From Octopus bimaculoides (taxonomy: Eukaryota), in the NCBI RefSeq assembly GCF_001194135.2, contig NC_069003.1, forward strand, positions 31,510,109-31,574,108: a stretch of DNA of 64,000 nucleotides, given 5' to 3'. The notes below the pieces were generated by a model. The model saw nothing but the letters and a program-made list of their open reading frames with translations, made no database searches and was not told the origin of the DNA. The position numbers and the translations under genes were made by a program. Numbering within the stretch: the stretch's first letter is position 1; each line of letters begins with the position of its first letter. Below are positions 3,070 to 49,889 of the stretch, one piece after another.

Positions 3070-4105
3070 CGTTCAGGAGTTGGTATAACTCTTAATGCGA
3101 TTTAACTTATAATTTCTAAAAATCCAAATTTGTTCCTGTGAGAACATAAGAGAACGACTGTGAGTCTCTGAGTGGGGATCCTGGATAAAAATCTTATCAG
3201 GCGACAGAGGTCTTCAAGAACTGTAAATATCAATATTGTGTGTTTTATTTAAATTTTCCATTCTTCAAATTCATTTTTTAAAAAATCAATAAAGATATAT
3301 TTTAATAAGTTAATTAATATTTCAATTAATTTCCATTTGCAACAATATGCTGTCCAAGTAAAACAGTTTTTTTTTTATTTTTTAAATAACACAAAAAATC
3401 ATGTACAACTCTTGGGAGGGGAATAGNNNNNNNNNNNNNNNNNNNNNNNNNNNNNNNNNNNNNNNNNNNNNNNNNNNNNNNNNNNNNNNNNNNNNNNNNN
3501 NNNNNNNNNNNNNNNNNNNNNNNNNNNNNNNNNNNNNNNNNNNNNNNNNNNNNNNNNNNNNNNNNNNNNNNNNNNNNNNNNNNNNNNNNNNNNNNNNNNN
3601 NNNNNNNNNNNNNNNNNNNNNNNNNNNNNNNNNNNNNNNNNNNNNNNNNNNNNNNNNNNNNNNNNNNNNNNNNNNNNNNNNNNNNNNNNNNNNNNNNNNN
3701 NNNNNNNNNNNNNNNNNNNNNNNNNNNNNNNNNNNNNNNNNNNNNNNNNNNNNNNNNNNNNNNNNNNNNNNNNNNNNNNNNNNNNNNNNNNNNNNNNNNN
3801 NNNNNNNNNNNNNNNNNNNNNNNNNNNNNNNNNNNNNNNNNNNNNNNNNNNNNNNNNNNNNNNNNNNNNNNNNNNNNNNNNNNNNNNNNNNNNNNNNNNN
3901 NNNNNNNNNNNNNNNNNNNNNNNNNNNNNNNNNNNNNNNNNNNNNNNNNNNNNNNNNNNNNNNNNNNNNNNNNNNNNNNNNNNNNNNNNNNNNNNNNNNN
4001 NNNNNNNNNNNNNNNNNNNNNNNNNNNNNNNNNNNNNNNNNNNNNNNNNNNNGGGGGGGGGTGTTTTTGTTTTTTTGCAGGACGAGATGAATCTGAATGA
4101 AATAA

Positions 4106-4698: not shown

Positions 4699-4857
4699 TC
4701 AGCTGTCTTGTTGTTTCAATGATTCTAATGGACTTCCTGATCCGGATTCTATAGATGAAATTCTCTCCAATAAGTCTTCACAAAATGCTTCTGATGTTGA
4801 TGGTAGTGATGATGATGATGGAACGGATTCTTCGTCAAGTGGTAGGTCAGTAAAATC
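4699..4857 (-). CDS. AATK: Candidate terminal coding exon: DFTDLPLDEESVPSSSSLPSTSEAFCEDLLERISSIESGSGSPLESLKQQDS*
   Basis: tttttaatattttgtag|GAT acceptor. Only the phase-0 frame stays open to this point, matching the phase-0 donor at 11835. Acidic/Ser composition resembles the tail. A donor TAG|gtgagg follows at 4690. Confidence 0.55.
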   Translation of the reverse strand, partial: DFTDLPLDEESVPSSSSLPSTSEAFCEDLLERISSIESGSGSPLESLKQQDS

Positions 4858-4890: not shown

Positions 4891-4924
<34 letters not shown>

Positions 4925-5997
4925 AATAATCATCCTTTCTATTAAAGACACAAGACCTGAAATTTCGAGAGAGGGGACTAGTCAATTACATTGACCCCAG
5001 TACTCAGCTGGTACTTAATTTATCGACCCCGAAAGGATGAAAAGCAAAGTTGACCTTGGTGGAATTTGAGCTCAGAACACAGTGACAGGTAAAATACTGC
5101 TAAGTATTTTACCTGACATGCTAATGATTCTGCCAGCTCACCACCTTAATAATAATAATAATTATTATTATTATTATTATTTCAAATTTTTGCCACAAGG
5201 GCAGCTTGGGGGAGGTGGGGACGAGTCGATTACATCAACCCCCAGTGTTCAACTGGTACTTATATATCAACCCCAAAAGGATGAAAGGCAAAGTCGACCT
5301 TGGTGGAATTTGAACTCAGAACGTAGCGACGGGCAAAATACCACTAAGCATTTTGTCCAGTATGCTAACAATTCTTATTTCTTTATTGCCTACAAGGGGC
5401 TAAACGTAGAGGCTAAACAAGGCCAGACGAAGGGATTAAGTCGATTACATCGACCCCTGTGCGTAACTGGTACTTAATTTATCAACCCCGAAAGGATGAA
5501 AGGCAAAGTCGACCTTGGTGGAATTTGAACTCAGAACATAGCGACGGGCAAAATACCACTAAGCATTTCGCCCGGCATGCTAACAATTCTGCCAGCTCAC
5601 CGCCTTAATAATAACAACAAAAACAGAATCAATCCATATACTAATAATAGTTCTTTAAGAAAGATAAAAAATGTTTCAACTAAATACATAATCAAAACTT
5701 TAAGACTTACACTTTTACAGCATATGGGAAATAGCACTACCAAGCATAGCACGTTATGTATAGAATCCTCAGCATAATAGCACTACTAAGCACTGCACAT
5801 ATATATATGTATAGAGTATATTCGACAGAATATCACCTGATGAAATGGCTGGTAGATAACAATTATGAATTTATGTAACGTTATGTGATAAATTAAGTAA
5901 TGGACTCATATCTGAAATAAACCATGCTATTGAAACAAGGATATTAATGTTTTACATTATCCATTTGTTTTGGCGGGTTTCTTATGTAAGAAAAAGA

Positions 5998-7350: not shown

Positions 7351-7592
7351 GCACACATGAATAGTGGTGATTCCTGCTACATAAGGCAGAGCATGCAATT
7401 TATAAAAATCAAAGCAATATAATTGAAGCAGGGTATATATAGCATGTATATGGCTTCTTTGCAGCCATCTGAAGTTAAAAAATGAAAGATTTATAACCAA
7501 ATCTAATTTGTTATTTGCATTCAATTATATATTCTAGACATGCAGAAAACACACGGATATATATTTATCCGAAAAAGTATAGTATCAAATAT

Positions 7593-7698
7593 CCATCACG
7601 GCTGATCTTACCAAATGGTTTCATGTAAAGAATACAATGGAGTGTTAGGTAACAATCTGATTATATAACTTCACACTCATCAGAGTTAGCTGATATGG
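7593..7698 (-). ncRNA. Type I hammerhead ribozyme motif, catalytic core intact (copy 1)
   Basis: Minus strand: aact-CTGATGA(7683-7677)-Gtgtgaag...ctttacat-GAAA(7622-7619)-CC ATTT GG-TA|agat. Predicted cleavage between 7609 and 7608. Confidence 0.75.
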
Positions 7699-7763
7699 AA
7701 GGGAATATGGTGACTGATTGAAAACCGAAGAATAACTATAATACGGGCAACGCTATTCTTCAC

Positions 7764-7807
<44 letters not shown>

Positions 7808-8012
7808 AGGTGAAGAATGAAACTGCCAGTGTTATATCTATTCTTTGGTTTTCAATCTGGCAATCATTGCAATGACATATCGGTGACAAATCAAATGTCA
7901 TGCATGATTACATGGATAAGAACAATGATACTGCCATACTGATTATATAATGTACGTTATATAAAAATAGACCCACAGCTGTTTAGTCATGACCAAATGA
8001 AGATGAGATAGA

Positions 8013-8059
<47 letters not shown>

Positions 8060-8300
8060 NNNNNNNNNNNNNNNNNNNNNNNNNNNNNNNNNNNNNNNNN
8101 NNNNNNNNNNNNNNNNNNNNNNNNNNNNNNNNNNNNNNNNNNNNNNNNNNNNNNNNNNNNNNNNNNNNNNNNNNNNNNNNNNNNNNNNNNNNNNNNNNNN
8201 NNNNNNNNNNNNNNNNNNNNNNNNNNNNNNNNNNNNNNNNNNNNNNNNNNNNNNNNNNNNNNNNNNNNNNNNNNNNNNNNNNNNNNNNNNNNNNNNNNNN

Positions 8301-8334
<34 letters not shown>

Positions 8335-10236
8335 TCTAAACAATGAAGGTGTTTTATCAATATACTATTAAATGTCTACCCACAAAGTCTAGATAATTAC
8401 TTACGAACGTGCACGTGCACACACATGCATGTGTCTATGTGCATTTGTGTATATATATATCAGTATGTATATCTGTGTGTGTTTATGTGTGTACATTTGC
8501 ATGGTTATTGTGGTATATATGTATATACTTAAACATAATTGACTTACTCACATTTGCTGCCAATTTGGCCATGTCACATCTACCTCATCATATCACAAGC
8601 ATCAATTATCATCTCTTATCATTATCATAATGATTATTATCAATAGCATAATCATTGTTTGTTTGTTTTTTGGAACAATAAATCTTGAAGCACATAATGC
8701 TATGAATAACATGTCCCATGGGCAGCCGTCAACTTTTTCTATCCAAAAGGAAATTTTCATCTCATTACTTACATGCTATCATTTATAGCTCTATCTGCTC
8801 CAAGATCCATTGTTCCAAAACATAGTTATTTCACATTCTCTCAAAAGTTTATAAATTCTTATGGCATCAATTATCATCTTTATTTTCATTATCCTTATCA
8901 GCATCCTAATTATCCTCATCATAACACAAACTCTTTCATTTTTTACTTCATTGTTTTCACCTCTGTCTCATATGTTAGTTTGGCTTTACTTATTCTGTTC
9001 TGTCTAAAGTGGAATCTGTTTGTCAGTCAGGTGAACTGAGGCACTGACTATAGTGGTGAGGCATGAACATAAAAATCACCATATTTTCCAGCATACAAGT
9101 AAAATTTCTCAGACTAAAATTTACAGCCATAAAAGTTTTTAAAAAAGGTATGTTGAATTATACACCAACACAAATTTGGAGGACCAAAAATTCCATATGA
9201 AATGCAGGAGGATTTGGAAAGATGGTAATGATGTTTGAACATTTACAATATGTTTACTTTATATGCAGGAAAATATGAAACCTAGAACTGCACCTCCTCC
9301 TCCTCATCATCATCACAACAACACTGTAGTTGGGTAATTTAAGCCTTTTGTCAATACTACCAGCATCATCATCACCATCATTAAGAGGAGATTGCCGTCA
9401 TCATTAAGAGGAGAAAGAGGTATGAAATGACTTCAGGACAGGGCAAATGGAAAATGTCACACTCATACCTCTCTCCTCACCAAAATATTAGTGAAAAAAA
9501 AAAGTGAAGGATTTTCATTGAGGATTTGAAACCTGTTTACATATTTCATTTGATGAAAATTTGCTGCCATCGCCACGTCTACCACAGTATAAAGTCTGTC
9601 TGGCTTTCAAGTCAACAAAATTAGCAGGCAGTGGAGTCAGGGACAGGTAGAGATCCCTATATTATTTTAAGAATGCAGGGCATAGGAAGCAGAGGTGACT
9701 GGGAAGCTGCAATGTTCATGCCTTTCCAGAGGGAAGCAGGGATACGGATTAGCAGCATAAGGGAAGCAAATTGTTTTCAGCGAGAAACTGAAAGCAGATC
9801 ACGTACTTCACTCACCGAGACCTTACCTCTTGCTCTAAACCGGTTGTCACTTCATTTATTCTGACATGATGGCCATAGGAGGATTGAATAAAAAATACAA
9901 ACTATTTTAAAGCAAAAGAAGAAATAAGCACTTTTCTCTCTCTCCCTCTCTCTCTCTACAAGAATATATATACACTCACACAAGGGGGGTGCTGGAAAGT
10001 TCTTGGCTTTGGGTAAAAGAAAATACAAGAGGATCAGTTAATTATGATTTTAGTCAACATACTCCCCTCTCAGATTCACACACTTATTATAACAGCCTTT
10101 CAGTTTCTCAAAGTCCTGTAAAAGAACTCAGACGGTTGGGCCTCCAACTAGGCTTATTTTGAGAAGAAGGCAAAGTTGATTATATTTACCCCAGTACCTG
10201 ACTGGTACTTTATTATATCAACCCTAAAAGGTTTAA

Positions 10237-10675: not shown

Positions 10676-10948
10676 CTTCTATATATTAATGACCAACTTG
10701 AAGTCAGCTTTGTTAGCTTTATATTCTCTTATTCAAATGACACTAACATTCAGATTAACAAAAATTTATCTCAGACATTTAGACATTTAATCAACCTATT
10801 TATTTATTTACCATAAACACACATCTATAGACATGCATTGAGAGATGCACTAAAACACGTGGACATCATATCTCAGACATGTCCGAGTCCCACATCTTGA
10901 TGAGATGTAAAATGACCACTCGAAGACTTGTTCTTCATATTGTCTATC

Positions 10949-11112
10949 TAAGGCAAGATGCAGTGTATGTAAGGCAGGATATGGTATATGTAAGGCAAGA
11001 TATGGTGTATGTAAGGCAAGATATGGTCTGTGTGTGTAAGGCAAGATTTGGTATGTGTAAGGCAAGATATAGTGTATGTAAGGCAAGATATAGTGTATGT
11101 AAGGCAAGATAT
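10949..11112. repeat. 21-bp minisatellite (gtgtatgtaaggcaagatata) x about 8
   Basis: Direct inspection; produces 7-aa periodic spurious ORFs. Confidence 0.9.
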
Positions 11113-11194
11113 GTATTGATATATCTCTGGCAAGCTGTACTGTAGCTAAATCAGCTTATATAATTATGTCAACTGTAAAGTAAATGAGGAAAGA

Positions 11195-11590
11195 TGTAAT
11201 GTATTTGCAGCAACATGCAGAGTGTCTATTGGAACATGCAGTATGTCTATTACAACATGAAATGTGTCTAAGGAAACATGAAGTGTGTCTAAGGAAATAT
11301 GAAGTGTATCTATGGTAACATGTAATGTGTCTAAAGCAATACACGATGTAACAGTGTACTTACAGCAACACACTGTATCTATGACAACATGAAGTGTGTT
11401 TATGGCAACATGCAGTATGTCTATGGTGGCATGTAGTGCATCTATGGTGACATGCAATGTATCTATGGCAACATGCAGTGTGTCTATGGCAATGTAGAGT
11501 GTATTTATGACAATATACAGTATCTAGACCAAGATGTAGCATATCTATAGCAATATATAATGTATCTATGGCACAATATGTGTTATATCT
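11195..11590. repeat. Degenerate 21-bp minisatellite (atgcagtgtgtctatggcaac-like)
   Basis: Direct inspection; 7-aa periodic ORFs in the track. Confidence 0.8.
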
Positions 11591-11822: not shown

Positions 11823-13260
11823 TTAAATAAATACCTTTGATGTGTCTGAATTGCCAACTGTTGTGAGATCTTGACTGGTGGAATATTTTAAATGAAGGCT
11901 ACGTGGAATATCAAAATTGTCCATTTCAAGTCCATCGTCATCATCACCAATGTCCAGATCGATATCATTGAGAGAGGAAATTGTATAAAATGTTCGACGT
12001 GGTGGTGTTTTTTTACTAATTGGAGAGATGACCCGACTGGTCAGGATCTCCGATGCAATGGAACACGCGTTAAGTCCAGTTCCGGACGTGGAGAAACAAC
12101 TATTATCTGATTTACCAAAAGAAAATTCACTGTTTTTACCTAGATGTGGGAGCGATGCCAACGTATGTCTTCGCCTTTTATTGTGGGTAACTGGTTTGGG
12201 GTTCGAATCCATGGACCAGTCAAAGTCCAAGCTTCGACGGGGTGAGGGCACATTATCACAGCTTTTACCCACAAGCTGTCCACCAACTAGTTCATCCCAT
12301 TCGTAAGAGTCTTGTTGCGATGGAGAGTCATCAGAATTGCTTTTTATTAGCCGAGATTTATTAAAAGTCCCACTAAAACTGTCTACAGGTATACCATTTT
12401 CCGGTATTGGCGCTAAAGGCATTGCTTTCATATTGGAACGACGTAAGCCGCTTGAATTTGGACGTCTTTGAAAATAGATGTCGGCCATTTCTTCAGAGAT
12501 CTCAGGAGACGATTCATTGGCACTTTCATCACTACAAGAATGGATCGAGCTCAGATCTTGGATACGCTCTGATGAACGCTGCAGCTCAGCATCTGAGTGA
12601 GAAGGTGAAGTATTGGGAGACACGTTTGGTATTGGAGAAGGCATTCCATCTTCTTCAGTGCTATTTGCCTTTTTCACTTTGCTGGTACTGATTGGACTGG
12701 ATCCATCGACACTATCGACATCATCATGACCAGAAAGGTCAACTTTACCCTGTTTTGCAATGGCTTTTGCTGGACTTTTTGGTTCCAACTGAAACTCAGG
12801 ATCGAGATGGAGCATAGTTTCACTGTTTGGTGCATTCTTTGTTTCAGACTCTAGCTGAGCTAAAAGCTTCTCTTCAGTTTCTGTATTGATGTCGGTCACC
12901 AAATCGCTATCATTAAAGGTCAAGAGGTGACGGCTAGCCAATGGAATGGTCAGACCATTTTCTAATGGAACTTCGATGGGAATATTAAGAGCTACATCTC
13001 CTGTGTTACCGTTTGCTACAGGAGCTTCAGTCTCAGCTACAAACAATTCCAGAGCATCTGTCGCTATCTCCATGGATTCTGGGGCAATTCCATGACTTGG
13101 GCTTTCGATTTCAACTGGACTCAGAATATTCCATTTACTTTCAAAATCTGATTCTTCCATGTTCTTCAAAGAGATCTCCAGATCCAACAGATGACCATGT
13201 AATTCCTCAATTGTAGGACGCTGTTCTGGTTTCTGCCAACACATTTTCATCAGTTCGTAT
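11823..13260 (-). CDS. AATK: Coding exon 10: [16 protein letters not shown]...long disordered tail...DTSK(VFI*)
   Basis: ttttattcag|A acceptor; matches the 485-aa ORF in the track. Ends either at TAA 11823 or at a possible donor AAG|gtattt (exon end 11835). Confidence 0.93.
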
Positions 13261-16200
13261 CTGAATAAAACAAAAGACAAAAATTAAAGAGGAGTCAAAG
13301 AATTTCTCAAATTCTAAATAAAACGAATATTGTTAAAACTATATACAAACCAAGATGGTAGCATCTACATGGGTGATCAGCCTGCTAGAAATAGCAGCTA
13401 AATCCCTTGCACTTTAATCCTGTTACAATGACTCCTTATCTCTTTTTGACTTTGTGGTGTACTGGAGGTCAAACAAAAGAATGACTAGTGCAGTCTGCAG
13501 AGTAATTACTGGTACACATCAGTTTTAACTCTTTTAGCATTCAATGGGACTGAACTCAGAACCATGTGGTTGGGAAGGAAACTTTTTACCACATAGCCAT
13601 GCCTACAACAGAATGATCACAACTGGAAATTCTTTGATCAATAGTCAGCTGGATCAGGGACGACTTAGGGTTAAACAACAACATCAAAAACATTAGACAA
13701 TTTAGTATTAAATACTCAATACTCAAGAGAAGGATGAGATGGCCATGGCTGGAATGTTATTTGATCATTGATCTCCTGGATCAGAGTTGACATGGAGTAA
13801 AACAACAAGCATAGAATTTTACAGAGTATAGTCAGTGTTACGTAGAACTTACATGTTGATCTTCTGGTGCTCAGGATAATTTGGAACTGGCAGAACTTCT
13901 GTCTTCTTTAGAACAACACAGTCCAAGACTTGTTCATCGGTCAACCAATGATAGGGCTGTCGGCCAAACTGTATCAATTCCCACATGCTCACACCATAAG
14001 ACCTGGGAGTTATGAAAATAAAAAATGAAAATGATAAAAGTGTGAGAGGCTAAATCTGGCCAGTTTGAACATAAAATGTGTAGAACATCTGGGCTGGACA
14101 TGGTTGGTTTAAGTGCTAAAGGGTTAAATGTACCAGTTCTTTTGATTTTAGAAGGAAAACAAGAAGATTCTGTAAAAGACTTGAATTGAGATGCTTACCA
14201 AATATTGGCCTGAGGTGTAAAAGCCTTTGTACGCCAAACTCCTTTTTGTAAAGTAAGCGTCTCAGGAGCCATCCACCGGACTGGCAACAGGTCACACCCT
14301 GTATCATAATAATCCTCCTACAATAGACATTTTAGATATATTTATACAATTGTTGCTGAAATGATGTATAAAGAATTAAACCAGACATATACAGACCTGG
14401 TCTATTAACAACATACAAAAAATTTAACAACACATAGATAGATGTGAGTGTAGGTATGGTTGTGTGGTTAAGAAGGTTGCTTTGCAGCCATATGGGTTTT
14501 GGGTTCAGTCCCACTGTACAGCACTTGAGGCAAGTGTCTTTTGTTATATGTAACCCCAGGCCAGCAATTTATGAGGGAATTGGTTCATGGAAACTGATCA
14601 TGTGTGAACATACATATATATAAATATATCTTTTATTTTATTTTTTTTTTTTACTTGTTTTAGTCACTAGACTGCAGCCATGCTGGGGTAGCACCTTGAA
14701 AACTTTTTGGTTGAATAAATTAACCCCAGTACTTATTTTTTTCGAGCCTGGTAATTATTCTATCAGTCAGTCTCTTTTGCTGAACCACTAAGTTACGGGG
14801 GACATAAACACACCAACACCAGTTATCAAGCAATGGAGGGAGGGACAAATGCACACACACACACACACACATGTATGTATATAATGTGCTTCTTTCAGTT
14901 TCTTTCTACCAAATCCACTCACAAGGATTTGGTCAGCCCAAAGATATAGTAGAATACACTTGCCAAAGATAATAAATAAAAAGGAAGGGGTGGTCAGAAT
15001 TGGAACACATTTGATCATATGTCTGCTCAAACAGGACTGACCTGGGGTTAAACAACATCTCATCAGCCAAAGAAGCCCTGCAAAATTTATAAGAATCATC
15101 CTTGTTACTTGGAGTATATATCTCCCGCCTTTGCTGATGTGGCAACGGTTACAAGGATGAGCCCCACTGACTCACCTCCACCATTAATCAAACTAATGAG
15201 AGGAAGCCTCTTCGTTGCTAAAAATAACAGTCTAAATTTTCCTAAAGAAATTGGAAGGACACATTGGATAATTTAGTCATAAATGCATACATTGTTTGAT
15301 AGAAGAGGAGCAAAATGATTGATGGTTATGACTGAAAAACCATTTGATTATAGATCTATTGAATGAGGACTGACCAGGAGTTATGAAATAACATCAACAC
15401 CATTCCTACCTCGAGTCAATCAGGGAACTTCTTTGAGGCCAGTCACCTGTTAGAAATAACAGTCAAATCTCTCTCAAATCATGCCCTGCTGTTTACAAAA
15501 AATACATGTTGAATAATGTGGTCTTGTGTTCCTCTGCACACAATAAAAAGTTGGAATGGTCACAGTTGGAATGTATTTGATAAGGGCTATCCATTCCCTT
15601 GTAATTATGTGCCGAAAAATAAACTTCTACATCCATCATGTGACAGTAGAAAGCTATATTATTATGAGTTAAATATACCCTTTGATGAGCATTGGTGACC
15701 TTACAAGTCAACAAATGGTGACCCCCACTATAACAATGACCTGTTTGGTATGTTGACCTACATTCAAATGTTTGCAGTGTAAAAGGCGTAGGAGTGGCTG
15801 TGTGGTAAGAAGCTTGCTTCCCAACCACATGGTTCCGGGTTCAGTCCCACTGCGTGGCACTTTGGGCAAGTCTCTTCTACTATAGCCTCGGGCCGACCAA
15901 AGCCTTGTGAGTGGATTTGGTAGACGGAAACTGAAAGAAGCCCGTTGTATATATGCATATATATATATGTATGTGTTTGTGTGTCTGCGTTTGTTCCCCC
16001 CAACATTGCTTAACAACCGATGCTGGTGTGTTTACGTCCCCGTAACTTAGCGGTTCGGCAAAAGAGACCGATAGAATAAGTTCTAGGCTTCCAAAGAATA
16101 AGTCCTGGGGTCGATTTGCTCGACTAAAGGCGGTGCTCCAGCATGGCCACAGTCAAATGACTGAAACAAGTAAAAGAAATCTTTTTTTTATTGTTTGATA

Positions 16201-16649: not shown

Positions 16650-19244
16650 CTTATTCATAAATATATATAAAATACTGACCTTATACAAATCCTCAGCCAG
16701 GCCATAATCACCAACTTTTACAGACAGATCATTGGTCACCAAACAATTACGCAAAGCAAGATCACTACAAGTAAAATAAATGTGGAAAAGGAAAATGTAT
16801 TTTAAAAACAATTTCTTTTAAAGTTAGACATAAATACTTACGTGTTAAGGTCATCTCTGCAGATTTTCTGTGGAAATGATAGCCAACACTGATTTTGTTA
16901 GGATGTTTTGTATCCGAGATGCCAGATATAAACAAACAATGAGATCAAAGATGAAAAAGTGGGTAATGGGCGTATAAGCCATATTTCTGGAGTTTTTACT
17001 CCTTCATCAGCACTTACCCCAACCCATTAACCATTCACAAGTACCTTGACCTAATATGCTGCAAATCCTTTATTTTGGTTCTGTAAAAAGGGGAGGGCCT
17101 TTTTTCCCCCACTCCTTTTGCCGATCCAAAATAAGTGATTTGCAGCATATTAGGAGGTCAGGATATTTGATTCCACGCCCAAAAAAAATTCGAGTTTTTT
17201 TTTNNNNNNNNNNAAAAAAAAATTAGCAAAAAATCTAACAATGAACGTAGTTGAGACCCTGAAGACAATGATTAGATCCTGTACACACTTACCAATGAAC
17301 ATAGTTGTGACGATGAAGACAAGCCAAACCACAGGCAACATCGACAGCAAAATGTAACAAGAGTTTCCTCTCTTTATGCATTGGTAATTTATTTTCCTGT
17401 TCGATGAGGTAACTCTTCAGATCGCCCTATAATATAGAGAGAAAAAGTTAAATTCACACAGATCAACACATATAATAAAGTTCATAAGTTTCTATGCCAC
17501 GGGAGGTGAAATCATTAATGTTTTTAGTAAAGCCCTTCACCAAAATCTACGTACGCAAGCGTGCATGTACGCATGTGTGTTGGCGTGTTCTATATACATC
17601 ATAGACACACACATACATACATATATATCACTGGGTAATCTTAGGTATGTACCGAAAGATCACCATATCACTGTATTGTTTTACTGACCAGACTATCTTA
17701 TGTTGTTACACACCGCTCAGCTGGTTAAGTGGGCAGGCGAACGTTCCCCCTGAATGGGACGCCAGTCCGTTGCAGAGTGACCCATTTACAGTTGAGTGGA
17801 CTGTGGCGACTTGAAATTAATTGTTTTGCTGAAGAACACACGGTAAAGTAAAAATCTACCGAACACACAATACCGTTAGTCTGAGGATCAAACCACTACA
17901 CCACGCTCTACATACATATAATGTAATAAAAACTAGAATCCAATGAACATAGCGGTGATCTATGTGAGTACAAATTCTTTAATCGAGTTTGTAAATATGA
18001 ATAAGCTTGTATGCTGTGGGAGACAAAGATCTTGAGGTTTCGTGGGTGAAAGAAAATTTCCCCAACTATAAAGAGATAAGTTTCAGGTTGAACGGGAGAG
18101 TTGCTTCCCTTGATTTTCAATATTTGCTTGACAGATAGATTCAATGTTTTTCTTATTTATTTTAATCCTTTTCAAAGTTATTTGAATTAATATAAAAAAT
18201 ATTTCTATCGTAGTATTTTATAAGATCTTCTATTGCTCTGTTCTTTCTATACAACATATATTTATAGCGTTTGCAATTTTGAACAGATTTTATTTTTTGA
18301 ATAGATTTTATCTTTTTTTTCAGACTTATAATGCAGGTGTACCAAATAAGTAAAAAAAAAATTTTTTTTAATTATCAAACCCAATAGTCCTTCAGACTGA
18401 TTTGTAACAAAAACACTCCTTAGTAATTACTGCTTTTAATTATGACTTAGAAGTGAAAGGGGCAACACCTATGCTCCTTTGTTGAAGTTACAAAATTAAT
18501 TGGAAACGATTACTCTCATAGTTGAAAAATATTGGGAATGTGTATTATATATAATGCATGAAGCCGGAGAAATATAAGTTGGGCATCACATGTAGTTTAC
18601 AGGACAGGCAAAGGATTAATCCCTCATTCAGTTTAACATCACTCTTAGTACCATGAGCAGAGTCAGCTCGATTGTAAAGTATTTGGACAAGTCTCTGGCT
18701 TGTGTGTGTGTATGCTCACATGTGCGCGCATGTATATACACAGTCGCCATATTTAATTCCATAACGGCTATCTCTGCCGAGCGCAGGGTTACATAATCAG
18801 ACTGTTATCTAACACTCTGTTGAACCCTGCGTGAAACCGATTGATAAGATCGGCTGTAATGGATATATAATACTTTGGTTAATATATATGTATATATATG
18901 TAGGTAGACAGATAGATAGATAGACAGGCAGATAGATAGCAATATGTTATTTTTATATATACATAAAATACATATATATAATTTGAATAAGGTGACAACA
19001 AATGAATTTAGTGCATCTCATAAGAAAACCTATTCATCACAGCAAAAAAAGGGATTTCCTAAAACCACTTAGTATGCTTGAACATGCAGAGAGGGGCCCC
19101 TTCTCCATCAAGCATCGAAATTGCACCAAACTAAATGTAAACTTTATCAGTTGGTCTCTTATTCAACATGGATATGAAATGTGGAGTGTTGCAAGTTAAC
19201 ATCGATAAACAATATTGAAACCCAACCATGACTTTATGGACACA

Positions 19245-20230: not shown

Positions 20231-21221
20231 GCGGGACCCGTGAATATTTCACAGAATTAATGGTAAACTTATTGGGTTATTTCTGAAACTTTTTATCCAT
20301 TATATATTCTGAAGCATGTGTCTATTGAGTTCTAAGAACAGGTTATTAGTATAGTTATACTGAAACTTACCGGTAACCAGCAACTTCTTGGAGGAACTTC
20401 TGCATTTCAAGAGCGCTTGCATCATCTCGAAGTACTTGAACAACAACATTACTTTGTCTAACTCCAACCAAAACATTATCAGCAATTCCTTGGACAACCT
20501 TTGCAAAATGAAAAAGAGTTTACAGATTAACAATGTTTAAAACAACTTAGCCAATATTAGCAATAAAACAGAGAAAGATCATCATTATCATTATTATTAT
20601 AATCATTATCATTAATACAGGAAGTTGGCTGAATCATTAACATGCCAGACTAAATAATTAGTAGCATTTCAACTGTCTTTATGCTCTGAGTTCAAATTCT
20701 CCCAAAGTCAACTTTGCCTTTCATCCTTTTAGGGATCAACAAAATAAGTATCAGTCGATCACTGGGGTCAATGTAATCGACTAGTCCCCTCCCCAAATAT
20801 ATTAGGTCTTGTTCCTATTGTAGAAAGAATTACTAATATTATTAAGGTGACAAGCTAGCAGAATCGTTAGCACACCTGGTGTATTTTGACCATCGCTACG
20901 TTCTGACTTCAAATACCGCCAAGGTTAACTTTGCCTTTCATCCTTTCAGGGTCAATAAATTAATTTATTATTATTATTATTATTATTTATAAGGCGGTGA
21001 GCTGGCAGAATCATTAGCATGCCAGGCAAAATGCTTAGCAGTATTTCATCTGTCTTTACGTTCTGAGTTCAAATTCCGCCAAGGTCGCCTTTGCCTTTCA
21101 TCCTTTCAGAGTCGATAAATTAAATTCCAGTTGCGTACTGGTGTCGATCTAATTGACTGGCCTCCTCCCCAAAAATTTTGGGCCCTGTGCCTAGAGTAGA
21201 AAAGATTATTATTGTTATTTA

Positions 21222-25439: not shown

Positions 25440-26047
25440 TATCTTTTATGCTTCAGTCATTGGACTGTGACCATGCTNNNNNNNNNNNNNNNNNNNNNNN
25501 NNNNNNNNNNNNNNNNNNNNNNNNNNNNNNNNNNNNNNNNNNNNNNNNNNNNNNNNNNNNNNNNNNNNNNNNNNNNNNNNNNNNNNNNNNNNNNNNNNNN
25601 NNNNGCTGAACTGCTAAGTTACAGGGACAGAAACAAACCAATATCGGTCGACAGCAATGGTTGGGGATAACACAAACACACACATATATATGCAATGGGC
25701 TTCCACACAGTTTTCGTCTACCTAATTCATGCACAAGCCTGGGGCTACAGTAGAAGACACTTGCCCAAGATATTGTGCAATGGTGGGTAAAGTGAGCTTC
25801 TTAAGCACACGGCAATGCCTGCACCTGTATCACAAAGATTTTTAAAAAGGAGAACCTTTGTCTTGAACATTTTTTTTTTTTTTTTCTAATCTATAAAATA
25901 TCCAGTATTTATAAGACCATTTTCCAAAATATTGAAATAGCAACTTACTTTGAATCTTGTAGATTTTCCAAAGCAGGAGCACTGAAATGCCAAGAAGACA
26001 ATGCTGGCTAGCACCACAATAGAGACCAGTACTGTTATTTCTAGCAT
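11823..26047 (-). CDS. AATK: Lemur-tail kinase (LMTK/AATK family), spliced CDS complement(join(25949..26047,24650..24848,23429..23499,20371..20498,19348..19435,17293..17426,16680..16764,14199..14317,13853..14002,11823..13260)), 2511 nt, 836 aa
   Basis: All nine introns are GT-AG with compatible phases, and the total length is divisible by 3. Architecture: N-terminal TM, RFK|[50 protein letters not shown]...RPT, post-kinase DFESKWNIL, long acidic/Ser tail. GWFG, DLALRNC, DYG and the FExxW post-kinase motif are LMTK hallmarks (recalled from human AATK/LMTK2). The symbol denotes the family, not 1:1 orthology. Confidence 0.93.
13853..14002 (-). CDS. AATK: Coding exon 9: [49 protein letters not shown](I)
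   Basis: actcccag|G acceptor, AT|gtaagt donor, 150 nt, phase 2 to 2. Confidence 0.95.
14199..14317 (-). CDS. AATK: Coding exon 8: [39 protein letters not shown](W)
   Basis: ctattgtag|GAG acceptor, TG|gtaagc donor, 119 nt, phase 0 to 2. Confidence 0.95.
15785..16176 (+). mobile_element. SINE family B (head gtggctgtgtggtaagaagcttgcttcccaaccacatggttccgggttcagtccc, internal microsatellite, tail aaatgactgaaacaagtaaaaga)
   Basis: Full copy. Others at about 46453-46872 (+), 36152-36511 (-), 14645-14960 (-), 35395-35720 (-), 49650-50030 (-), plus many fragments. Confidence 0.85.
16680..16764 (-). CDS. AATK: Coding exon 7: [28 protein letters not shown] (catalytic loop, DYG)
   Basis: tacttgtag|T acceptor, AAG|gtcagt donor, 85 nt, phase 2 to 0. 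Confidence 0.96.
17293..17426 (-). CDS. AATK: Coding exon 6: [10 protein letters not shown]...[19 protein letters not shown](C)
   Basis: tattatag|GGC acceptor, TG|gtaagt donor, 134 nt, phase 0 to 2. Confidence 0.94.
18759..18862 (+). ncRNA. Hammerhead motif copy 2, core mutated (CTGCCGA)
   Basis: atct-CTGCCGA(18774-18780)-gcgcagggtt...aaccctgcgt-GAAA(18833-18836)-CCGATTGA-TA|agat. Confidence 0.65.
19348..19435 (-). CDS. AATK: Coding exon 5: [29 protein letters not shown]
   Basis: attccacag|G acceptor, CTG|gtttgt donor, 88 nt, phase 2 to 0. Contains the HPN..L.LLG kinase motif. Confidence 0.93.
19976..20013 (+). ncRNA. Minimal hammerhead-like motif (Penelope-type), non-canonical core
   Basis: tcttt-CTGTGGAA-gagc(gtag)gctc-GAAACGTT-aaaga: stem I tcttt/aaaga, stem II gagc/gctc, palindromic ACGT stem III. 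Confidence 0.45.
20371..20498 (-). CDS. AATK: Coding exon 4: [42 protein letters not shown] (beta2-beta3-alphaC)
   Basis: cattttgcaaag|GTT acceptor, CG|gtaagt donor, 128 nt, phase 0 to 2. This frame is absent from the ORF track. Confidence 0.92.
23429..23499 (-). CDS. AATK: Coding exon 3: [23 protein letters not shown] (Gly-rich loop)
   Basis: gttgcag|CC acceptor, CAG|gtaagt donor, 71 nt, phase 1 to 0. Confidence 0.93.
24650..24848 (-). CDS. AATK: Coding exon 2: [13 protein letters not shown]...NNEPNSRIV (juxtamembrane)
   Basis: ttcctccag|AGT acceptor, T|gtaagt donor, 199 nt, phase 0 to 1. Confidence 0.88.
25010..25350 (+). mobile_element. tRNA-headed SINE family A, less-decayed copy
   Basis: Colinear with 1199-1530 and retains CpGs. 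Confidence 0.8.
25949..26047 (-). CDS. AATK: Coding exon 1: [33 protein letters not shown] (signal-anchor TM plus CxC)
   Basis: The exon starts at 26096 after tttttcag. Two in-frame TGA codons precede ATG 26047. Donor is AAA|gtaagt, phase 0. Confidence 0.88.
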
Positions 26048-27053: not shown

Positions 27054-27523
27054 ATAATCCAAGTATACATTGGATATTAGATAACAGGGTGGTGGTCTAA
27101 TATATATGCTCTTCAGGGATGGCTGGTTTGAAAAACAATATGGTGATTGTTCTCTATTATTGAAGGTGTGTAAGTGTCGTATGTACTAGGTAGCTACCCT
27201 AATATCTGGTATAAAAGCAACTGATAAGATTGACTGTAATGGATCCGTGATACTTCATGCTTTGATTATTATACTCACTCTATCGACAAATATACAAGTG
27301 CCTACTTTTTCTGACTTCTGAATTATTAGACAACTATATATNNNNNNNNNNNNNNNNNNNNNNNNNNNNNNNNNNNNNNNNNNNNNNNNNNNNNNNNNNN
27401 NNNNNNNNNNNNNNNNNNNNNNNNNNNNNNNNNNNNNNNNNNNNNNNNNNNNNNNNNNNNNNNNNNNNNNNNNNNNNNNNNNNNNNNNTATATATATTAA
27501 TCAATGTATACAGTATTATATAT

Positions 27524-27629
27524 CCATTACAGCTGATCTTATCAATCAGTTTTGCACTAGGGGTTCACTGGAGTGTTAGATAACAGCCCAATTATGTAAC
27601 CCTGTGCTCATCAGAGATGGTAGTTATGG
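27524..27629 (-). ncRNA. Hammerhead motif copy 3, G12 mutated to A
   Basis: atct-CTGATGA(27614-27608)-gcacagggtt...tagtgc-AAAA-CTGATTGA-TA|agat. Confidence 0.65.
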
Positions 27630-28557
27630 ACAGCTTACATGCTCTCACATACTGCAGTGTATGATATATGATCAAATAATGAATGTGTACAGTATAGTCA
27701 TATGATTGTGCATAGTATCATCAAAAATGATTGTGTATAGTATGATCATAGATATATGACAGTGTATAGTAGCATCAGCTACAACTGTATATGGCAGAGT
27801 CCTTTACAATTGTGCATAATCATATAATATACGAGGATTGTATATTGTTATTGTCAACATCAGTTTGCATTGTACAAACCATATCTCTAAGATTGTCAAG
27901 AAGGCTGAGGATGCATTAGCACCACTCTGTAAGACCTTTGTCAGCCACTCTCCAGCTATTTATGACTATGGTATGTCCACACTTAGAGTTTGCATTACCA
28001 GTCTGGAACCACTGTTTCCAGGAAACTGTTCAGAAACATGCAACCAGATGAATACCCATCGTCAGACATCTACCATACACTGGACATTTTGTTTCGCTGG
28101 GCATGGACACACTAAAGCTCTGACATCTGGCAACTGATTTGGCAGACACCCATAAGATTATCCACCATCTTTCCAACAAGAACCTTTGTCTCCTTTTTGA
28201 ATTCCATATGTCTAACACTCATAGACATACTCACAAAATCAAAAAACAACACAACACCCAAGATTCTCGGAAACATTTTTACATGCTCAGAAAGCACAGA
28301 ATAAACTACCTGCATTAGTTGTTAGCTGTCAAGACACAACATCCTTCAAAACTTCCATGCTTCCTGAAATTCACCTGATGCACCCCACCCCCATTTCTTT
28401 CTCTTTTTTTTTTTTTTTGTCTTTTAAAGACTTATTCACTGTTCACTTCCTGTGCATATTCTACGAACTGTTCAGCAGTTTTGGTTACTTTTTCCAATGA
28501 GTTGTGATGCACCTGATCACCGCATACACTATGTTCATTATTATAGTGATAGTGGAC

Positions 28558-37700: not shown

Positions 37701-38369
37701 NNNNNNNNNNNNNNNNNNNNNNNNNNNNNNNNNNNNNNNNNNNNNNNNNNNNNNNNNNNNNNNNNNNNNNNNNNNNNNNNNNNNNNNNNNNNNNNNNNNN
37801 NNNNNNNNNNNNNNNNNNNNNNNNNNNNNNNNNNNNNNNNNNNNNNNNNNNNNNNNNNNNNNNNNNNNNNNNNNNNNNNNNNNNNNNNNNNNNNNNNNNN
37901 NNNNNNNNNNNNNNNNNNNNNNNNNNNNNNNNNNNNNNNNNNNNNNNNNNNNNNNNNNNNNNNNNNNNNNNNNNNNNNNNNNNNNNNNNNNNNNNNNNNN
38001 NNNNNNNNNNNNNNNNNNNNNNNNNNNNNNNNNNNNNNNNNNNNNGGGGGGGGGGGTGCGTTATGTTGTGGTAATAAGGTGAAAGAGGTAGAGAAGGTGT
38101 GGAGCAAGTGACTGAGTAGTAGTTAATAGAACAGAGAGGAGGTAGCAGTTAGTAACAAGTGTATAGTGGTGGGGGTGAGGTTATGGTGTGGAAAAATACT
38201 GTCTTAGCCCAAACTGATAATTATATTTCATAAAAACAAAAATTTAAACGTTAAGTTGAAGAAAAAGCTTCGTAATACTTGAGAGTGTGTTTATAACAAC
38301 AGCAACAATGAATTATGTAAATAATTTGATTAGGATAGGAGCAAGTGTGGCTATGTGGTAAGAAGTGGT

Positions 38370-38605
38370 AAGGCGGTGAGCTGGCAGAAACGTTAGCACA
38401 CCGGGCGAAATGCTTAGTGGTATTTCAGCTGTCTTTACGTTCTGAGTTCAAATTCCGCCGAGGTCGACTTTGCCTTTCAGCCTTTCAGGGTCGATAAATT
38501 AAGTACCAGTTACGCACTGGTGTCGATGTGATCGACTTAATCCCTTTGTCTGTCCTTGTTTGTCCCTTCTATGTTTAGCCCCCTTGTGGGCAATAAAGAA
38601 ATAAG
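38370..38605 (+). mobile_element. SINE family C (aaggcggtgagctggcagaaacgttagc...gttcaaattccgccgaggtcgactttgcc...)
   Basis: Full copy. Clusters at about 4935-5610 (-), 20630-21290 (+), 32865-33075 (+), 44390-45040 (+), 53280-53650 (-), 63214-63579 (-). Confidence 0.85.
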
Positions 38606-39853
38606 AAGTCTGCTTCCCGACCACATGGTTCTGAGTTCAGTCCCACTGCATGGCACCTTCGGTAAATGTTGATACTACAGCTCCAGGGCCGACCAAAGCC
38701 TTGTAAGTCTCTCACTACTGCTTGACAACTCATGTTGGTTTGTTTACATCTCTGTAACTGAGTGGTTTGGCAAAAAGAGACTGATAGAATAAATACCAGG
38801 ATTCAAAATAAGTACTTGGGCCAGAGCCTCATGGAGGCAAAGAGGTTGAGTTCCTTTCGAGCGTTAGGCCTCAAGGAAGCAATGTCTGACACTTTTGGCA
38901 TTATGTTGTGCTTGAGAAGAAGACCCATCAAGCTGAGCAAAATCGCAGTTGTGGCAGATACCAGTGTCATGCTGGTGGCACATAAAAACACCCTGGAGTC
39001 ACGCAAATGGCACCTGTGCCAGCAGCATGTGAAAGCAACCATTGCACTCTCAGAGTGGTTGGCATTAGGAAGGGCATCCATCCGTAGACAACCATGCCAA
39101 ATCAGACTGGAGTCTGGCGCAGCCTTCCAGCATGGAAACTGTCCAACCCATGCCAGCATGGACAATGGACATTAAATAATGATTATGATGATGAACTTTT
39201 CAAAGTGGTGCCCCAGCATGGTCGTACCCTGAAGACTGAAACAAGTAAAAAGAATGGTAAAAGCAAAAGATGTGGGTGCATGTCTTTGTGTTTGTTCCCC
39301 GTCACCAGTTGTCAACTGGTGCTGGTTTGTTTACATCCATGTAGCTTAGTAGTTTGGCACGAGAAGTACCAGGGTTGATTTGTTCGACTAAAACCCTAGC
39401 ATGGCCACAGTCAAATGACTGAAAGACAAAAGATACCAAATCTGTGTTATTGAGTAGAGAAGGATGGGTAAGAACCATGATGAAGATTAAGTATTGTTTA
39501 GTCCTAGATCAGCCCTGATCCAATAGGCTTAAAAGATCAAAGGTCTTCAGAGGATTAATGTTTGCAGTAGTAGTGGTGATGATGTTGCTTGGTCCCAGAT
39601 CAGCCCTGATCCAGTAAGCCTATCACCAAAGGTGTTTCCGCTGTTAACCATCCTATCTGTTAAGGTGAAGTGTACCTAGAGCAGCATTGTTGAAAATGTT
39701 CTCTTTTTCAGAAGCTCACTTTGCAGTCATGTGGTTTCAGGTTCAGTCCCGCTGCGTGGTACCTTCGGTAAGTGTTTCTATATAACCCCAGGTTGGCCAA
39801 TGCCTTGTGAGAGAATTCGGTAGACGGAAACTGTGAGAGCACCATATTTCATT

Positions 39854-39959
39854 CCATAACTACCATCTCTGAAGAGTGCAGGGTTACATAACTGGACTGT
39901 TACCTAACATTCTGTTGAGCCCCTTGTGCAAAACCAATTGGTAAGATCAGCCATAATGG
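39854..39959 (+). ncRNA. Hammerhead motif copy 4, G12 mutated to A, perfect palindromic stem III
   Basis: atct-CTGAAGA(39869-39875)-gtgcagggtt...cttgtgc-AAAA-CCAATTGG-TA|agat. Confidence 0.65.
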
Positions 39960-39974
39960 ATATATTATACTATA

Positions 39975-40022
<48 letters not shown>

Positions 40023-49853: not shown

Positions 49854-49889
<36 letters not shown>

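What the first reader, a model, noticed from the sequence alone, without database searches (positions are those of the whole stretch)
7593..7698. Hammerhead ribozyme with an intact core, in sense orientation to the kinase gene
On the minus strand this segment has every conserved hammerhead nucleotide: C3-U4-G5-A6-U7-G8-A9 (7683-7677), an 8-bp stem II base (gtgtgaag/ctttacat) extended by a long hairpin, G12-A13-A14-A15.1 (7622-7619), stem III ACC-ATTT-GGT and a GUA cleavage triplet. Stem I is aact/agat with one A.A mismatch and further pairing beyond it. If the 4699-4857 exon is real, the ribozyme lies in the last intron, 3' of an in-exon TAA alternative. Self-cleavage could then compete with splicing and favour the short C-terminal isoform; this last step is inference.
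Basis: partly seen in the sequence, partly recalled or inferred. Interest (0 to 1): 0.85.

Follow-up and report, generated by a model that had tools for sequence, protein, structure and literature searches.

The report
Decayed hammerhead-ribozyme repeat in octopus intron
The motif is real and is hammerhead-derived, but it is one worn copy of a short mobile repeat scattered through the Octopus bimaculoides genome. It happens to sit in a kinase-gene intron, and nothing shows that it regulates that gene.

Summary
A relaxed hammerhead descriptor finds only this site in the window, against 0.007 per simulated window.

It is not a unique feature of the gene. It is one of four dispersed copies, 67-82% identical, of a repeat of about 140 nt; the others are at 18754-18870(+), 27516-27634(-) and 39849-39967(+). 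The family consensus, with one decayed CpG restored, folds by unconstrained minimum free energy into a complete type I hammerhead. That fold has a long stem I, a long interrupted helix II and a palindromic helix III (ACCAAUUGGU).

The other three copies carry inactivating core changes (A6C; G12A twice). This copy keeps the core. It has lost the core-proximal part of stem I (pair probability 0.01 or less), has G.U at 10.1/11.1, and prefers another fold by 4.4 kcal/mol.

The window is Octopus bimaculoides, gene LOC106870410. The copy does lie, in sense, in the last intron of isoform X1.

Rfam models do not detect it. The copies are solitary, are followed by TA-rich microsatellite, and one is nested in another SINE. 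This fits the known hammerhead-bearing retroelements of animals (retrozyme or Penelope-like). Isoform control by self-cleavage is unsupported.

The parts
7585..7703 (-). Copy c1 of the hammerhead-bearing repeat. This is the finding; repeat homology extends to about 7716-7578.
   Evidence: blastn of the region against the window; alignments A1 and A2; covariance model R1 scores 118 bits.
7684..7699 (-). Stem I, 5' strand: outer UCCAU, an isolated C (7693), GCU, then the core-proximal AACU.
   Evidence: Read; pairing in the constrained fold. A at 7686 replaces the consensus U and gives the A.A mismatch.
7677..7683 (-). Core C3-U4-G5-A6-U7-G8-A9.
   Evidence: descriptor hit.
7623..7676 (-). Helix II: 8 bp at the core (G.U at 10.1/11.1) continued by a 7-bp, a 2-bp and a 4-bp segment closed by an ACCU loop; 54 nt in all.
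   Evidence: MFE fold; RNAalifold. Thirteen c1-specific substitutions lie here and the helix remains fully paired.
7619..7622 (-). G12-A13-A14-A15.1.
7610..7619 (-). Helix III, ACC-AUUU-GGU. The family consensus is the palindrome ACCAAUUGGU.
7608..7609 (-). Predicted scissile bond, 3' of A17 (7609).
   Evidence: Position follows from the hammerhead numbering applied to the sequence. Cleavage was not tested.
7592..7608 (-). Stem I, 3' strand: AGAU, bulged C, AGC, an isolated G (7599), then AUGGA.
18754..18870 (+). Copy c2. It is antisense to the kinase gene, in an intron. Its core reads CUGCCGA (A6C, U7C), so it is predicted to be inactive.
27516..27634 (-). Copy c4, about 1.5 kb upstream of the kinase start codon. 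CUGAUGA is kept but G12 is A, so it is predicted to be inactive.
39849..39967 (+). Copy c3. It has CUGAAGA (position 7 is free), G10.1-C11.1 and a perfect palindromic helix III, but G12 is A, so it is predicted to be inactive. It is nested in another repeat at that repeat's (TA)n tract.
4699..4857 (-). Terminal coding exon of isoform X1 (52 codons plus stop).
   Evidence: tblastn of the P0003 tail, 100% over 52 aa; acceptor ttttgtag| read.
11835..13259 (-). Large penultimate coding exon. The 5' splice site is AAG|gtattt at 11835/11834, and read-through gives VFI-TAA.
   Evidence: tblastn of P0001; sequence.

Best explanation
The segment is a relic copy of a short (about 140 nt), non-coding, interspersed retroelement of Octopus bimaculoides. 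Almost the whole of that element is a type I hammerhead ribozyme.

In the active source elements the RNA folded into a three-way junction. Stem I was long and formed by the two ends of the unit. Helix II was long and interrupted. Helix III was short and palindromic, able to extend into a 10-bp intermolecular helix in a dimer. The ribozyme would have processed the element's own transcripts, as in the hammerhead-bearing retrozymes and Penelope-like elements of other animals. New copies landed at TA-rich microsatellites.

After insertion the copies decayed neutrally. Three of the four in the window lost an essential core nucleotide. This one kept the core by luck or by being younger within its own subfamily, but it lost the core-proximal pairing of stem I.

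It sits in sense in the last intron of isoform X1 of kinase LOC106870410 simply because it landed there. Any residual self-cleavage is expected to be weak and without a selected role.

Shown: the sequence anatomy, repeat membership, consensus fold, compensatory changes and genomic position. Inferred: past catalytic activity, the retrotransposition mechanism, the link to Penelope-like elements, and present inactivity.
For: (1) Four dispersed copies in both orientations, 67-82% identical, all solitary.

(2) Columns 81-82 of alignment A2 read TG in c1 and c2 and CA in c3 and c4. These are the two decay products of a CpG. Restoring CG gives the canonical C11.1-G12, and hence G10.1-C11.1 plus GAAAC (inference).

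(3) That consensus has the complete hammerhead junction as its unconstrained MFE, at no energy cost. Pair probabilities are 0.69-0.86 for stem I, 0.71 for helix II and 0.44-0.48 for helix III.

(4) Helix II shows 6 pairs with changes on both sides among only four sequences, and 90.8% of cells are paired against 30-38% when partners are slid by 1-3 columns. In c1, 13 of its 22 differences from the consensus lie in helix II, and the helix stays fully paired, with no A.C mismatch, while no difference falls in the 11 core positions.

(5) The pairs include G.U wobbles, and model R1 scores 118-131 bits on the hammerhead strand against 10-16 on the opposite strand. The structure is therefore an RNA-level feature of this strand.

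(6) c3 interrupts a copy of an abundant repeat exactly at that repeat's internal (TA)n, and all four copies are followed by TA-rich microsatellite. (TA)n insertion bias is reported for Naiad Penelope-like elements (PMC8557442).

(7) Literature on type I hammerheads with a short palindromic helix III. They are typical of metazoan tandem retrozymes and also occur as dispersed motifs, some in pseudo-LTRs of Penelope-like elements (PMC4209133, PMC7229834, PMC7761336). Penelope-like elements are present in Octopus, with an expansion near JC distance 0.2 (PMC13282606); the copies here are at JC 0.12-0.21 from the consensus.

(8) With about 12-20% divergence per site, the chance that all 11 essential positions survive is 0.09-0.25 per copy. 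One intact core among four copies is roughly what neutral decay predicts.
Against: - Only four copies were available. The consensus has ties at two key columns, which were resolved by the CpG argument.
- No Rfam hammerhead model matches, even at E<=10.
- A 54-nt helix II is far longer than in canonical metazoan type I hammerheads (about 4 bp) or in hammerheads of Penelope-like elements (6-8 bp; PMC4209133).
- No tandem copies and no reverse-transcriptase or GIY-YIG reading frame lie nearby. The retrozyme or Penelope-like assignment therefore rests on analogy.
- No cleavage or expression data could be obtained.
- c1 is the most divergent copy yet has an untouched core (P about 0.08 if all its changes were neutral). 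This leaves some room for constraint.
Confidence: 0.75

Rival explanations
1. Co-opted intronic ribozyme. The copy still self-cleaves co-transcriptionally. By cutting the pre-mRNA between the isoform X2 terminal exon and the isoform X1 terminal exon, it shifts the output away from X1.
For: - The core is fully intact, including G12 and the GUA site.
- It is in sense in X1's last intron.
- Both candidate acceptors for the X2 terminal exon (9860 and 8994) lie 5' of it in the transcript, so a cut would separate the two alternative ends.
- c1 has no core change despite 20% divergence elsewhere (P about 0.08).
- Helix III is still 3 bp, with pair probability 0.66-0.72 in the isolated element.
Against: - Core-proximal stem I pairs have probability 0.01 or less, alone or with 50-200 nt of flank.
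- The hammerhead fold is 4.4 kcal/mol above the MFE.
- The 10.1/11.1 pair is G.U.
- No partner copy lies nearby in the same transcript for dimer formation.
- Sister copies are dead and lie in either orientation.
- The element is absent from the orthologous downstream region in L001.
- From my own knowledge of published work on ribozymes placed in introns (exon tethering to RNA polymerase II): only fast-cleaving ribozymes disturb splicing.
- In vertebrates, retrozymes are depleted from introns, not recruited there (bioRxiv 10.64898/2026.07.22.740005).
Confidence: 0.07
2. The family is a structured repeat of another kind, for example a hairpin-forming SINE or MITE, or a precursor of small RNAs. 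On this view the hammerhead-like core around the long hairpin is coincidental at the family level.
For: - Rfam hammerhead models do not score it.
- The dominant conserved structure is the 54-nt hairpin, which RNAalifold finds without predicting the core-proximal part of stem I or helix III.
- Three of four copies lack an essential core base.
- Stem I and helix III show no compensatory changes among the four copies.
Against: - The consensus carries all invariant hammerhead nucleotides in the right order and spacing around three helices, and folds that way by MFE.
- Helix III is palindromic, as in metazoan type I hammerheads (PMC4209133).
- The two variants at 11.1/12 are explained by decay of the canonical CG.
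- The chance expectation for even a relaxed motif is 0.007 per 64 kb.
- The structure is specific to one strand and contains G.U pairs, which argues against a DNA-level inverted repeat.
Confidence: 0.1
3. Pure chance: an AT-rich intron happens to contain CUGAUGA and GAAA flanked by complementary runs.
For: - The MFE z-score of the 106-nt segment is only -1.75.
- A genome of about 2.7 Gb would contain some chance matches to a relaxed descriptor (extrapolated).
Against: - There were 2 hits in 300 simulated windows, none with an 8-bp stem II.
- The motif is inherited from a repeat whose other copies and consensus show the same architecture.
Confidence: 0.03

Closest known systems
Type I hammerheads of metazoan non-LTR retrozymes (Cervera & de la Pena 2020, PMC7229834)
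   Same: - Type I topology.
- Invertebrate-style short helix III (2-3 bp plus a tetraloop) of palindromic sequence.
- Low-GC, non-coding repeat of about 150 nt that is little more than the ribozyme.
- Many copies per genome.
   Different: - Retrozymes are defined by tandem arrays of 150-450-bp units; the four copies here are solitary.
- Helix II here is 54 nt rather than about 4 bp plus a loop.
- Loop 1/loop 2 tertiary contacts cannot be recognised.
- circRNA expression is unknown.
Hammerheads of Penelope-like elements and their dispersed solo copies (Cervera & de la Pena 2014, PMC4209133; PMC7761336)
   Same: - Dispersed motifs in non-coding DNA.
- Helix II longer than canonical.
- Palindromic 15.x/16.x and loop 3.
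- High sequence variability with compensatory changes within one genome.
- Association with (TA)n sites, as reported for some Penelope-like elements (PMC8557442).
- Penelope-like elements are present in Octopus (PMC13282606).
   Different: - The minimal hammerheads of Penelope-like elements usually lack helix III and have a 4-5-bp helix I; here helix III is 3 bp and stem I extends to 14 pairs.
[quoted passage not shown]
- No pseudo-LTR or RT/GIY-YIG reading frame is nearby.
Schistosoma Sm-alpha and similar SINE-like hammerhead repeats (from my own knowledge; also discussed in PMC4209133)
   Same: A short interspersed repeat carrying a type I hammerhead, in very high copy number, with most copies decayed.
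   Different: Sm-alpha has a tRNA-like pol III head. No tRNA-like sequence was found here, and no promoter is evident.
Conserved intronic ribozymes of amniotes (hammerhead HH9/HH10; the CPEB3 HDV-like ribozyme), mentioned in PMC7761336
   Same: A self-cleaving motif in sense inside an intron of a protein-coding gene; thought to derive from domesticated retroelements.
   Different: Those are single-copy and ultraconserved across orders. This one is a member of a decaying repeat family with no evidence of orthologous conservation, and Rfam's HH9 and HH10 models do not match it.

Membership tests
Hammerhead ribozyme, type I | Invariant core: C3 U4 G5 A6 N7 G8 A9, G12 A13 A14, A15.1-U16.1, H17 (not G). 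| tested here: met
   All are present in c1 at 7683-7677, 7622-7619, 7610 and 7609. They are also present in the CpG-restored family consensus. The sister copies fail: c2 has A6C; c3 and c4 have G12A.
Hammerhead ribozyme, type I | Three helices around the core, with stem I open and helices II and III closed by loops. | tested here: inconclusive
   Consensus: all three helices form in the MFE. c1: helices II and III form, but the core-proximal stem I pairs have probability 0.01 or less and the full fold is +4.4 kcal/mol.
Hammerhead ribozyme, type I | G10.1-C11.1 base pair. | tested here: not met
   c1 and c2 have G.U. c3, c4 and the inferred ancestor have G-C.
Hammerhead ribozyme, type I | Match to the Rfam covariance models (Hammerhead_1, _3, _II, HH9, HH10) at the gathering score. 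| tested here: not met
   No hit at gathering in the window, and none at E<=10 on 401-nt and 131-nt sub-windows. My guess is that the 54-nt helix II is the cause; this could not be tested because only held sequence can be scanned.
Hammerhead ribozyme, type I | Site-specific self-cleavage giving 2',3'-cyclic phosphate and 5'-OH ends. | not testable with these tools
   An experiment is required.
Hammerhead ribozyme, type I | Loop 1/loop 2 tertiary contacts, needed for activity at cellular Mg2+. | not testable with these tools
   Bulges exist in stem I (C at 7604) and in helix II, but no known contact motif could be assigned.
Non-LTR retrozyme | Tandem repeats of 150-450-bp units, each with a hammerhead. 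| tested here: not met
   The four copies are 9-12 kb apart and solitary, and no adjacent second unit exists. A genome-wide test was not possible.
Non-LTR retrozyme | Expression as small circular RNAs. | not testable with these tools
   No transcriptome access.
Penelope-like element pseudo-LTR hammerhead | Location in the direct repeats that flank an RT/GIY-YIG reading frame. | tested here: not met
   No long non-kinase reading frame exists in the window. Solo dispersed copies of such motifs are, however, described (PMC7761336).
Penelope-like element pseudo-LTR hammerhead | Palindromic helix III/loop 3 that allows a dimeric ribozyme. | tested here: met
   The consensus and c3 have ACCAAUUGGU, a perfect 10-nt palindrome. 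c1 has ACCAUUUGGU, with one change.
Penelope-like element pseudo-LTR hammerhead | Insertion bias for microsatellites such as (TA)n. | tested here: inconclusive
   All four copies are followed by TA-rich repeats, and c3 splits a host repeat at its (TA)n. Four sites are too few, and (TA)n is very common in this genome.
Conserved (co-opted) intronic ribozyme | Orthologous conservation of the motif in the same intron across species. | tested here: inconclusive
   There is no R1 match in L001, the orthologous exon plus 10 kb downstream in a distant cephalopod with 49% amino-acid identity. Closer Octopus species could not be reached.

The most novel reading that the evidence does not exclude
Two readings go beyond the best explanation.

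(a) The octopus family could be a previously unrecognised hammerhead class with a roughly 50-nt helix II that Rfam models miss. On a crude extrapolation from one window (4 copies per 64 kb), it could number tens of thousands of copies, with younger members still making self-cleaved or circular RNAs.

(b) This particular copy could retain enough activity to cut the kinase pre-mRNA between the isoform X2 and X1 terminal exons and bias the choice of C-terminus.

The probability given is for (b), the more novel reading. I would put (a) at about 0.4 for the class being real and abundant, and about 0.15 for present-day activity.
Probability: 0.05. Interest if true: 0.65.

Novelty: new member of a known kind. 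Interest (0 to 1): 0.3.

Why it matters
Hammerhead ribozymes embedded in animal retroelements are well documented, so the find itself is not surprising. It has two modest points of value.

First, it shows a cephalopod hammerhead family that the curated Rfam models do not detect, probably because helix II is unusually long. Counts such as the 235 Hammerhead_1 loci reported for the giant squid (PMC6962438) may therefore understate ribozyme-bearing repeats in these genomes.

Second, it is a caution. A motif with a perfect catalytic core inside a gene can be a neutral relic. One intact core among four copies is about what random decay predicts, and the helices, not the core, are what this copy has lost. 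If the family proved active as circular RNA in octopus tissues, it would extend the retrozyme story to cephalopods.

Tried and rejected
- Rfam at the gathering score on the whole window, and at E<=10 on two sub-windows: no hammerhead hit. The only weak hits were miRNA-like matches to the neighbouring (AT)n palindrome.
- RNAalifold on the four copies recovers helix II and the outer stem but not the core-proximal part of stem I or helix III. It prefers a UUGGU/AGAUC hairpin instead. I kept the hammerhead model because the CpG-restored consensus folds into it unaided.
- More copies were sought in five ways.
  - Covariance model R1 with filters off on the window, L001 and L002 found only the known four; the other hits were CA/TG microsatellite.
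  - A protein search with a SINE-derived reading frame, meant to pull in other octopus contigs, found nothing.
  - The repeat has stop codons in all six frames, so it cannot be searched as protein.
  - Exact-pattern scans of the metagenome and viral collections found nothing.
  - A look-up of isoform X2 was not on record. Isoform X1 returned the same chromosome segment with the same gaps.
- ARAGORN found no tRNA-like head.
- A hammerhead-like string in L001 (5760) was examined and rejected, because no A15.1-U16.1-closed helix III or H17 can be drawn.
- ADAR-type editing was considered as the source of c1's helix II changes and rejected. The changes are G-to-A and C-to-T on both arms of one strand.

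Full report
**Observation**

On the minus strand the segment reads ...UUCCAUAUCAGCUAACU-CUGAUGA-GUGUGAAG...CUUUACAU-GAAA-CC-AUUU-GGU-A|AGAUCAGCCGUGAUGGAU....
- CUGAUGA at 7683-7677.
- An 8-bp base of helix II at 7676-7669 and 7630-7623, including two G.U pairs.
- GAAA at 7622-7619.
- Helix III, ACC-AUUU-GGU, at 7619-7610.
- A17 at 7609.
- Stem I, AACU/AGAU, with an A.A mismatch, followed by a bulged C and further pairing.

The extension of helix II is the predicted fold of that segment.

I wrote a relaxed type I descriptor and ran it on both strands. It finds this site and no other in the window. It gave 2 hits in 300 first-order Markov simulations of the window, none with a stem II of 8 bp or more. 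The motif is therefore more than chance.

Rfam does not see it. Nothing reaches a gathering score in the window, and no hammerhead family appears even at E<=10 on 401-nt or 131-nt sub-windows.

**What it belongs to**

A blastn of the region against the window shows three more copies: 18741-18874(+), 39840-39974(+) and 27630-27490(-). A covariance model built from the four copies (R1) and run without filters finds no others in the window, in an orthologous locus of another cephalopod, or in the same chromosome segment fetched from NCBI.

Shared sequence spans about 140-160 nt. The flanks are unrelated and the copies are solitary. Pairwise identity is 67-74% between c1 and the others, and 81-82% among c2, c3 and c4.

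All four copies are followed by TA-rich microsatellite. c3 interrupts a copy of an abundant octopus repeat exactly where intact copies of that repeat carry their internal (TA)n(TG)n tract.

**The family is a hammerhead**

In the alignment (A2) the majority sequence keeps CUGAUGA, GAAAC, a stem I of 14 pairs formed by the two ends of the unit, and a helix III that is a perfect palindrome, ACCAAUUGGU.

At positions 11.1/12 two copies read UG and two read CA. These are the two deamination products of CG, so the ancestor most simply had C11.1-G12. That gives the canonical G10.1-C11.1 pair followed by GAAAC. This step is an inference.

The reconstructed sequence folds, unconstrained, into exactly the hammerhead three-way junction with the core unpaired. 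Pair probabilities are 0.69-0.86 for the core-proximal stem I, 0.71 for helix II and 0.44-0.48 for helix III.

Compensatory evidence is as follows:
- Across four sequences, 6 pairs change on both sides. 90.8% of cells are paired, against 30-38% when the 3' partners are slid by 1-3 columns.
- c1 differs from the consensus at 22 positions. Thirteen lie in helix II, which nevertheless stays fully paired (C-G to U-A, G-C to A-U, or G.U intermediates, with no A.C mismatch). None falls in the 11 essential core positions.
- The pairs include G.U wobbles, and R1 scores 118-131 bits on this strand but only 10-16 on the complement. The constraint therefore acted on RNA of this polarity.

With four sequences these statistics are suggestive, not conclusive. 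Stem I and helix III show no double changes.

**State of the individual copies**

- c2 has CUGCCGA (A6C).
- c3 and c4 have A at position 12.

All three should be inactive.

c1 keeps the whole core but has several defects:
- The consensus U at 2.3 is now A (7686). This gives the A.A mismatch next to the core, so the probability of the 1.1-2.1, 1.2-2.2 and 1.4-2.4 pairs falls to 0.01 or less, with or without 50-200 nt of flanking intron.
- The hammerhead fold is 4.4 kcal/mol above an alternative in which ACUC pairs with GAGU across the CUGAUGA box.
- The 10.1/11.1 pair is G.U.
- The palindrome of helix III is broken.

At 12-20% divergence per site, all 11 essential positions survive with probability 0.09-0.25 per copy. 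One intact core in four copies is about what neutral decay gives.

**Genomic setting**

The large reading frame at 13280-11823(-) is 100% identical to Octopus bimaculoides LOC106870410, a protein with a tyrosine-kinase domain.

Isoform X1 (885 aa) ends with 52 codons encoded at 4857-4702, after a good acceptor. The last intron of X1 therefore runs from 11834 to 4858, and c1 lies inside it in sense. The NCBI chromosome record gives the same picture.

Isoform X2 ends ...SK-NK-stop. The only two acceptor-plus-AAYAARTRR matches in that intron are at 9860 and 8994, and both are 5' of c1 in the transcript.

c2 lies in another intron of the same gene in antisense, and c4 lies about 1.5 kb upstream of the start codon, so there is no orientation pattern.

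**Mechanism**

The best-supported reading is that c1 is a relic of a hammerhead-bearing, non-autonomous retroelement.

Type I hammerheads with a short palindromic helix III occur in three settings. They are the hallmark of metazoan non-LTR retrozymes (tandem units, PMC7229834). They also occur in Penelope-like elements. And they occur as dispersed solo copies (PMC4209133, PMC7761336).

Further context from the literature:
- Retrozymes have recently been argued to be non-autonomous derivatives of Penelope-like elements (bioRxiv 10.64898/2026.07.22.740005).
- Some Penelope-like elements prefer (TA)n targets (PMC8557442).
- Octopus genomes carry Penelope-like elements, with an expansion near JC 0.2 (PMC13282606), which is similar to the divergence seen here.
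- Giant-squid annotation lists 235 Rfam Hammerhead_1 loci (PMC6962438).

In the source elements the ribozyme would cut multimeric or read-through transcripts to unit length, alone or as a dimer through the palindrome. This is inferred by analogy, not shown.

**The regulatory hypothesis**

Nothing found here supports it beyond the position and the intact core. The weakened stem I, the competing fold and the absence of a partner copy argue against it. So do the dead sister copies and the absence of the element downstream of the orthologous exon in L001 (a distant species, so a weak test).

From my own knowledge of published work on ribozymes engineered into introns, only fast-cleaving variants disturb splicing, because exons stay tethered to the polymerase. 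I give the hypothesis about 5-7%.

**Limits**

I could not reach more octopus sequence. The family-level claims therefore rest on four copies. The links to retrozymes or Penelope-like elements, the copy number and any present-day activity remain to be tested as listed under next steps.

Noticed in passing
window 7746-7827 (both strands): About 45 nt upstream of the element (minus-strand sense) lies a near-perfect palindrome: CATTCTTCACCTGACAT-(AT)n-ATCAGGTGAAGAATA. It produces dozens of sub-threshold miRNA-family matches in Rfam (28-43 bits against gathering scores of 75-140). It is probably a foldback or MITE-like structure around an (AT)n microsatellite, not a miRNA.
   Followed up: partly
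window 39707-39833 and 39980-40226; similar copies at 15808-16171, 46477-46858, 36160-36470(-), 14653-14971(-), 49654-49998(-), 35399-35710(-): An abundant octopus interspersed repeat (...GGTAGACGGAAACTGAAAGAAGCCCGTCG-(TA)n(TG)n-TTTGTCCCC...CTTGACAAC...) with an internal microsatellite. Copy c3 of the hammerhead element is nested at that microsatellite. The 20 nt before the hammerhead unit (GAGAGCACCATAT, or CAGTCGCCATAT in c1 and c2) loosely resemble the host's GAAGCCCGTCGTATAT. This is unexplained; it could reflect a composite origin or microhomology at integration.
   Followed up: partly
window 4915-5623, 20613-21219, 32906-33076, 33435-33656, 38369-38590, 44819-45040, 53292-53646, 63214-63579: A second abundant SINE-like family (...GGTACTTAATTTATCGACCCCGAAAGGATGAAAGGCAAAGTCGACCTCGGCGGAATTTGAACTCAGAAC...) occurs in both orientations. 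Tandem pairs lie at 4915-5623 and at 63214-63579.
   Followed up: no
window 10920-11580: Two blocks of a 21-nt tandem repeat (GTATGTAAGGCAAGATATGGT-like) lie immediately 3' of the large kinase exon, inside the last intron or the read-through 3' UTR.
   Followed up: no
window 9860 and 8994 (minus strand): These are the only two sites in the X1 last intron where an acceptor AG is followed by AAY-AAR-stop, matching the NK-stop end of isoform X2. One of them is probably the X2 terminal exon. Both lie upstream of the hammerhead copy in the transcript.
   Followed up: partly
L001 5760-5800 (+), about 300 nt downstream of the orthologous kinase exon in another cephalopod (ENA ERZ21867824): The string CUGAAGA-A-GGCCGG-AGGACAUA-CCGGCC-GAAAC has hammerhead-like boxes, a 6-bp G10.1-C11.1 helix II and the extra base after A9 that is typical of hammerheads in Penelope-like elements. 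No A15.1-U16.1 helix III, no H17 and no stem I could be drawn, and Rfam gives no hit. It may be a fragment or a chance match.
   Followed up: partly
L001 8509-8574 (+): A weak tblastn match (E 0.015; DLLERLSSTES) to the X1 terminal exon. If real, the alternative C-terminal exon is conserved among cephalopods, and the last intron is only about 3 kb in that species.
   Followed up: no
window, many sites (for example 3420-4070, 8067-8340, 25470-25600, 35700-36200, 37500-38050, 57320-58150): Long runs of N, mostly adjacent to microsatellites. The NCBI chromosome record carries the same gaps, so further repeat copies may be hidden there; c4 abuts one such gap.
   Followed up: no
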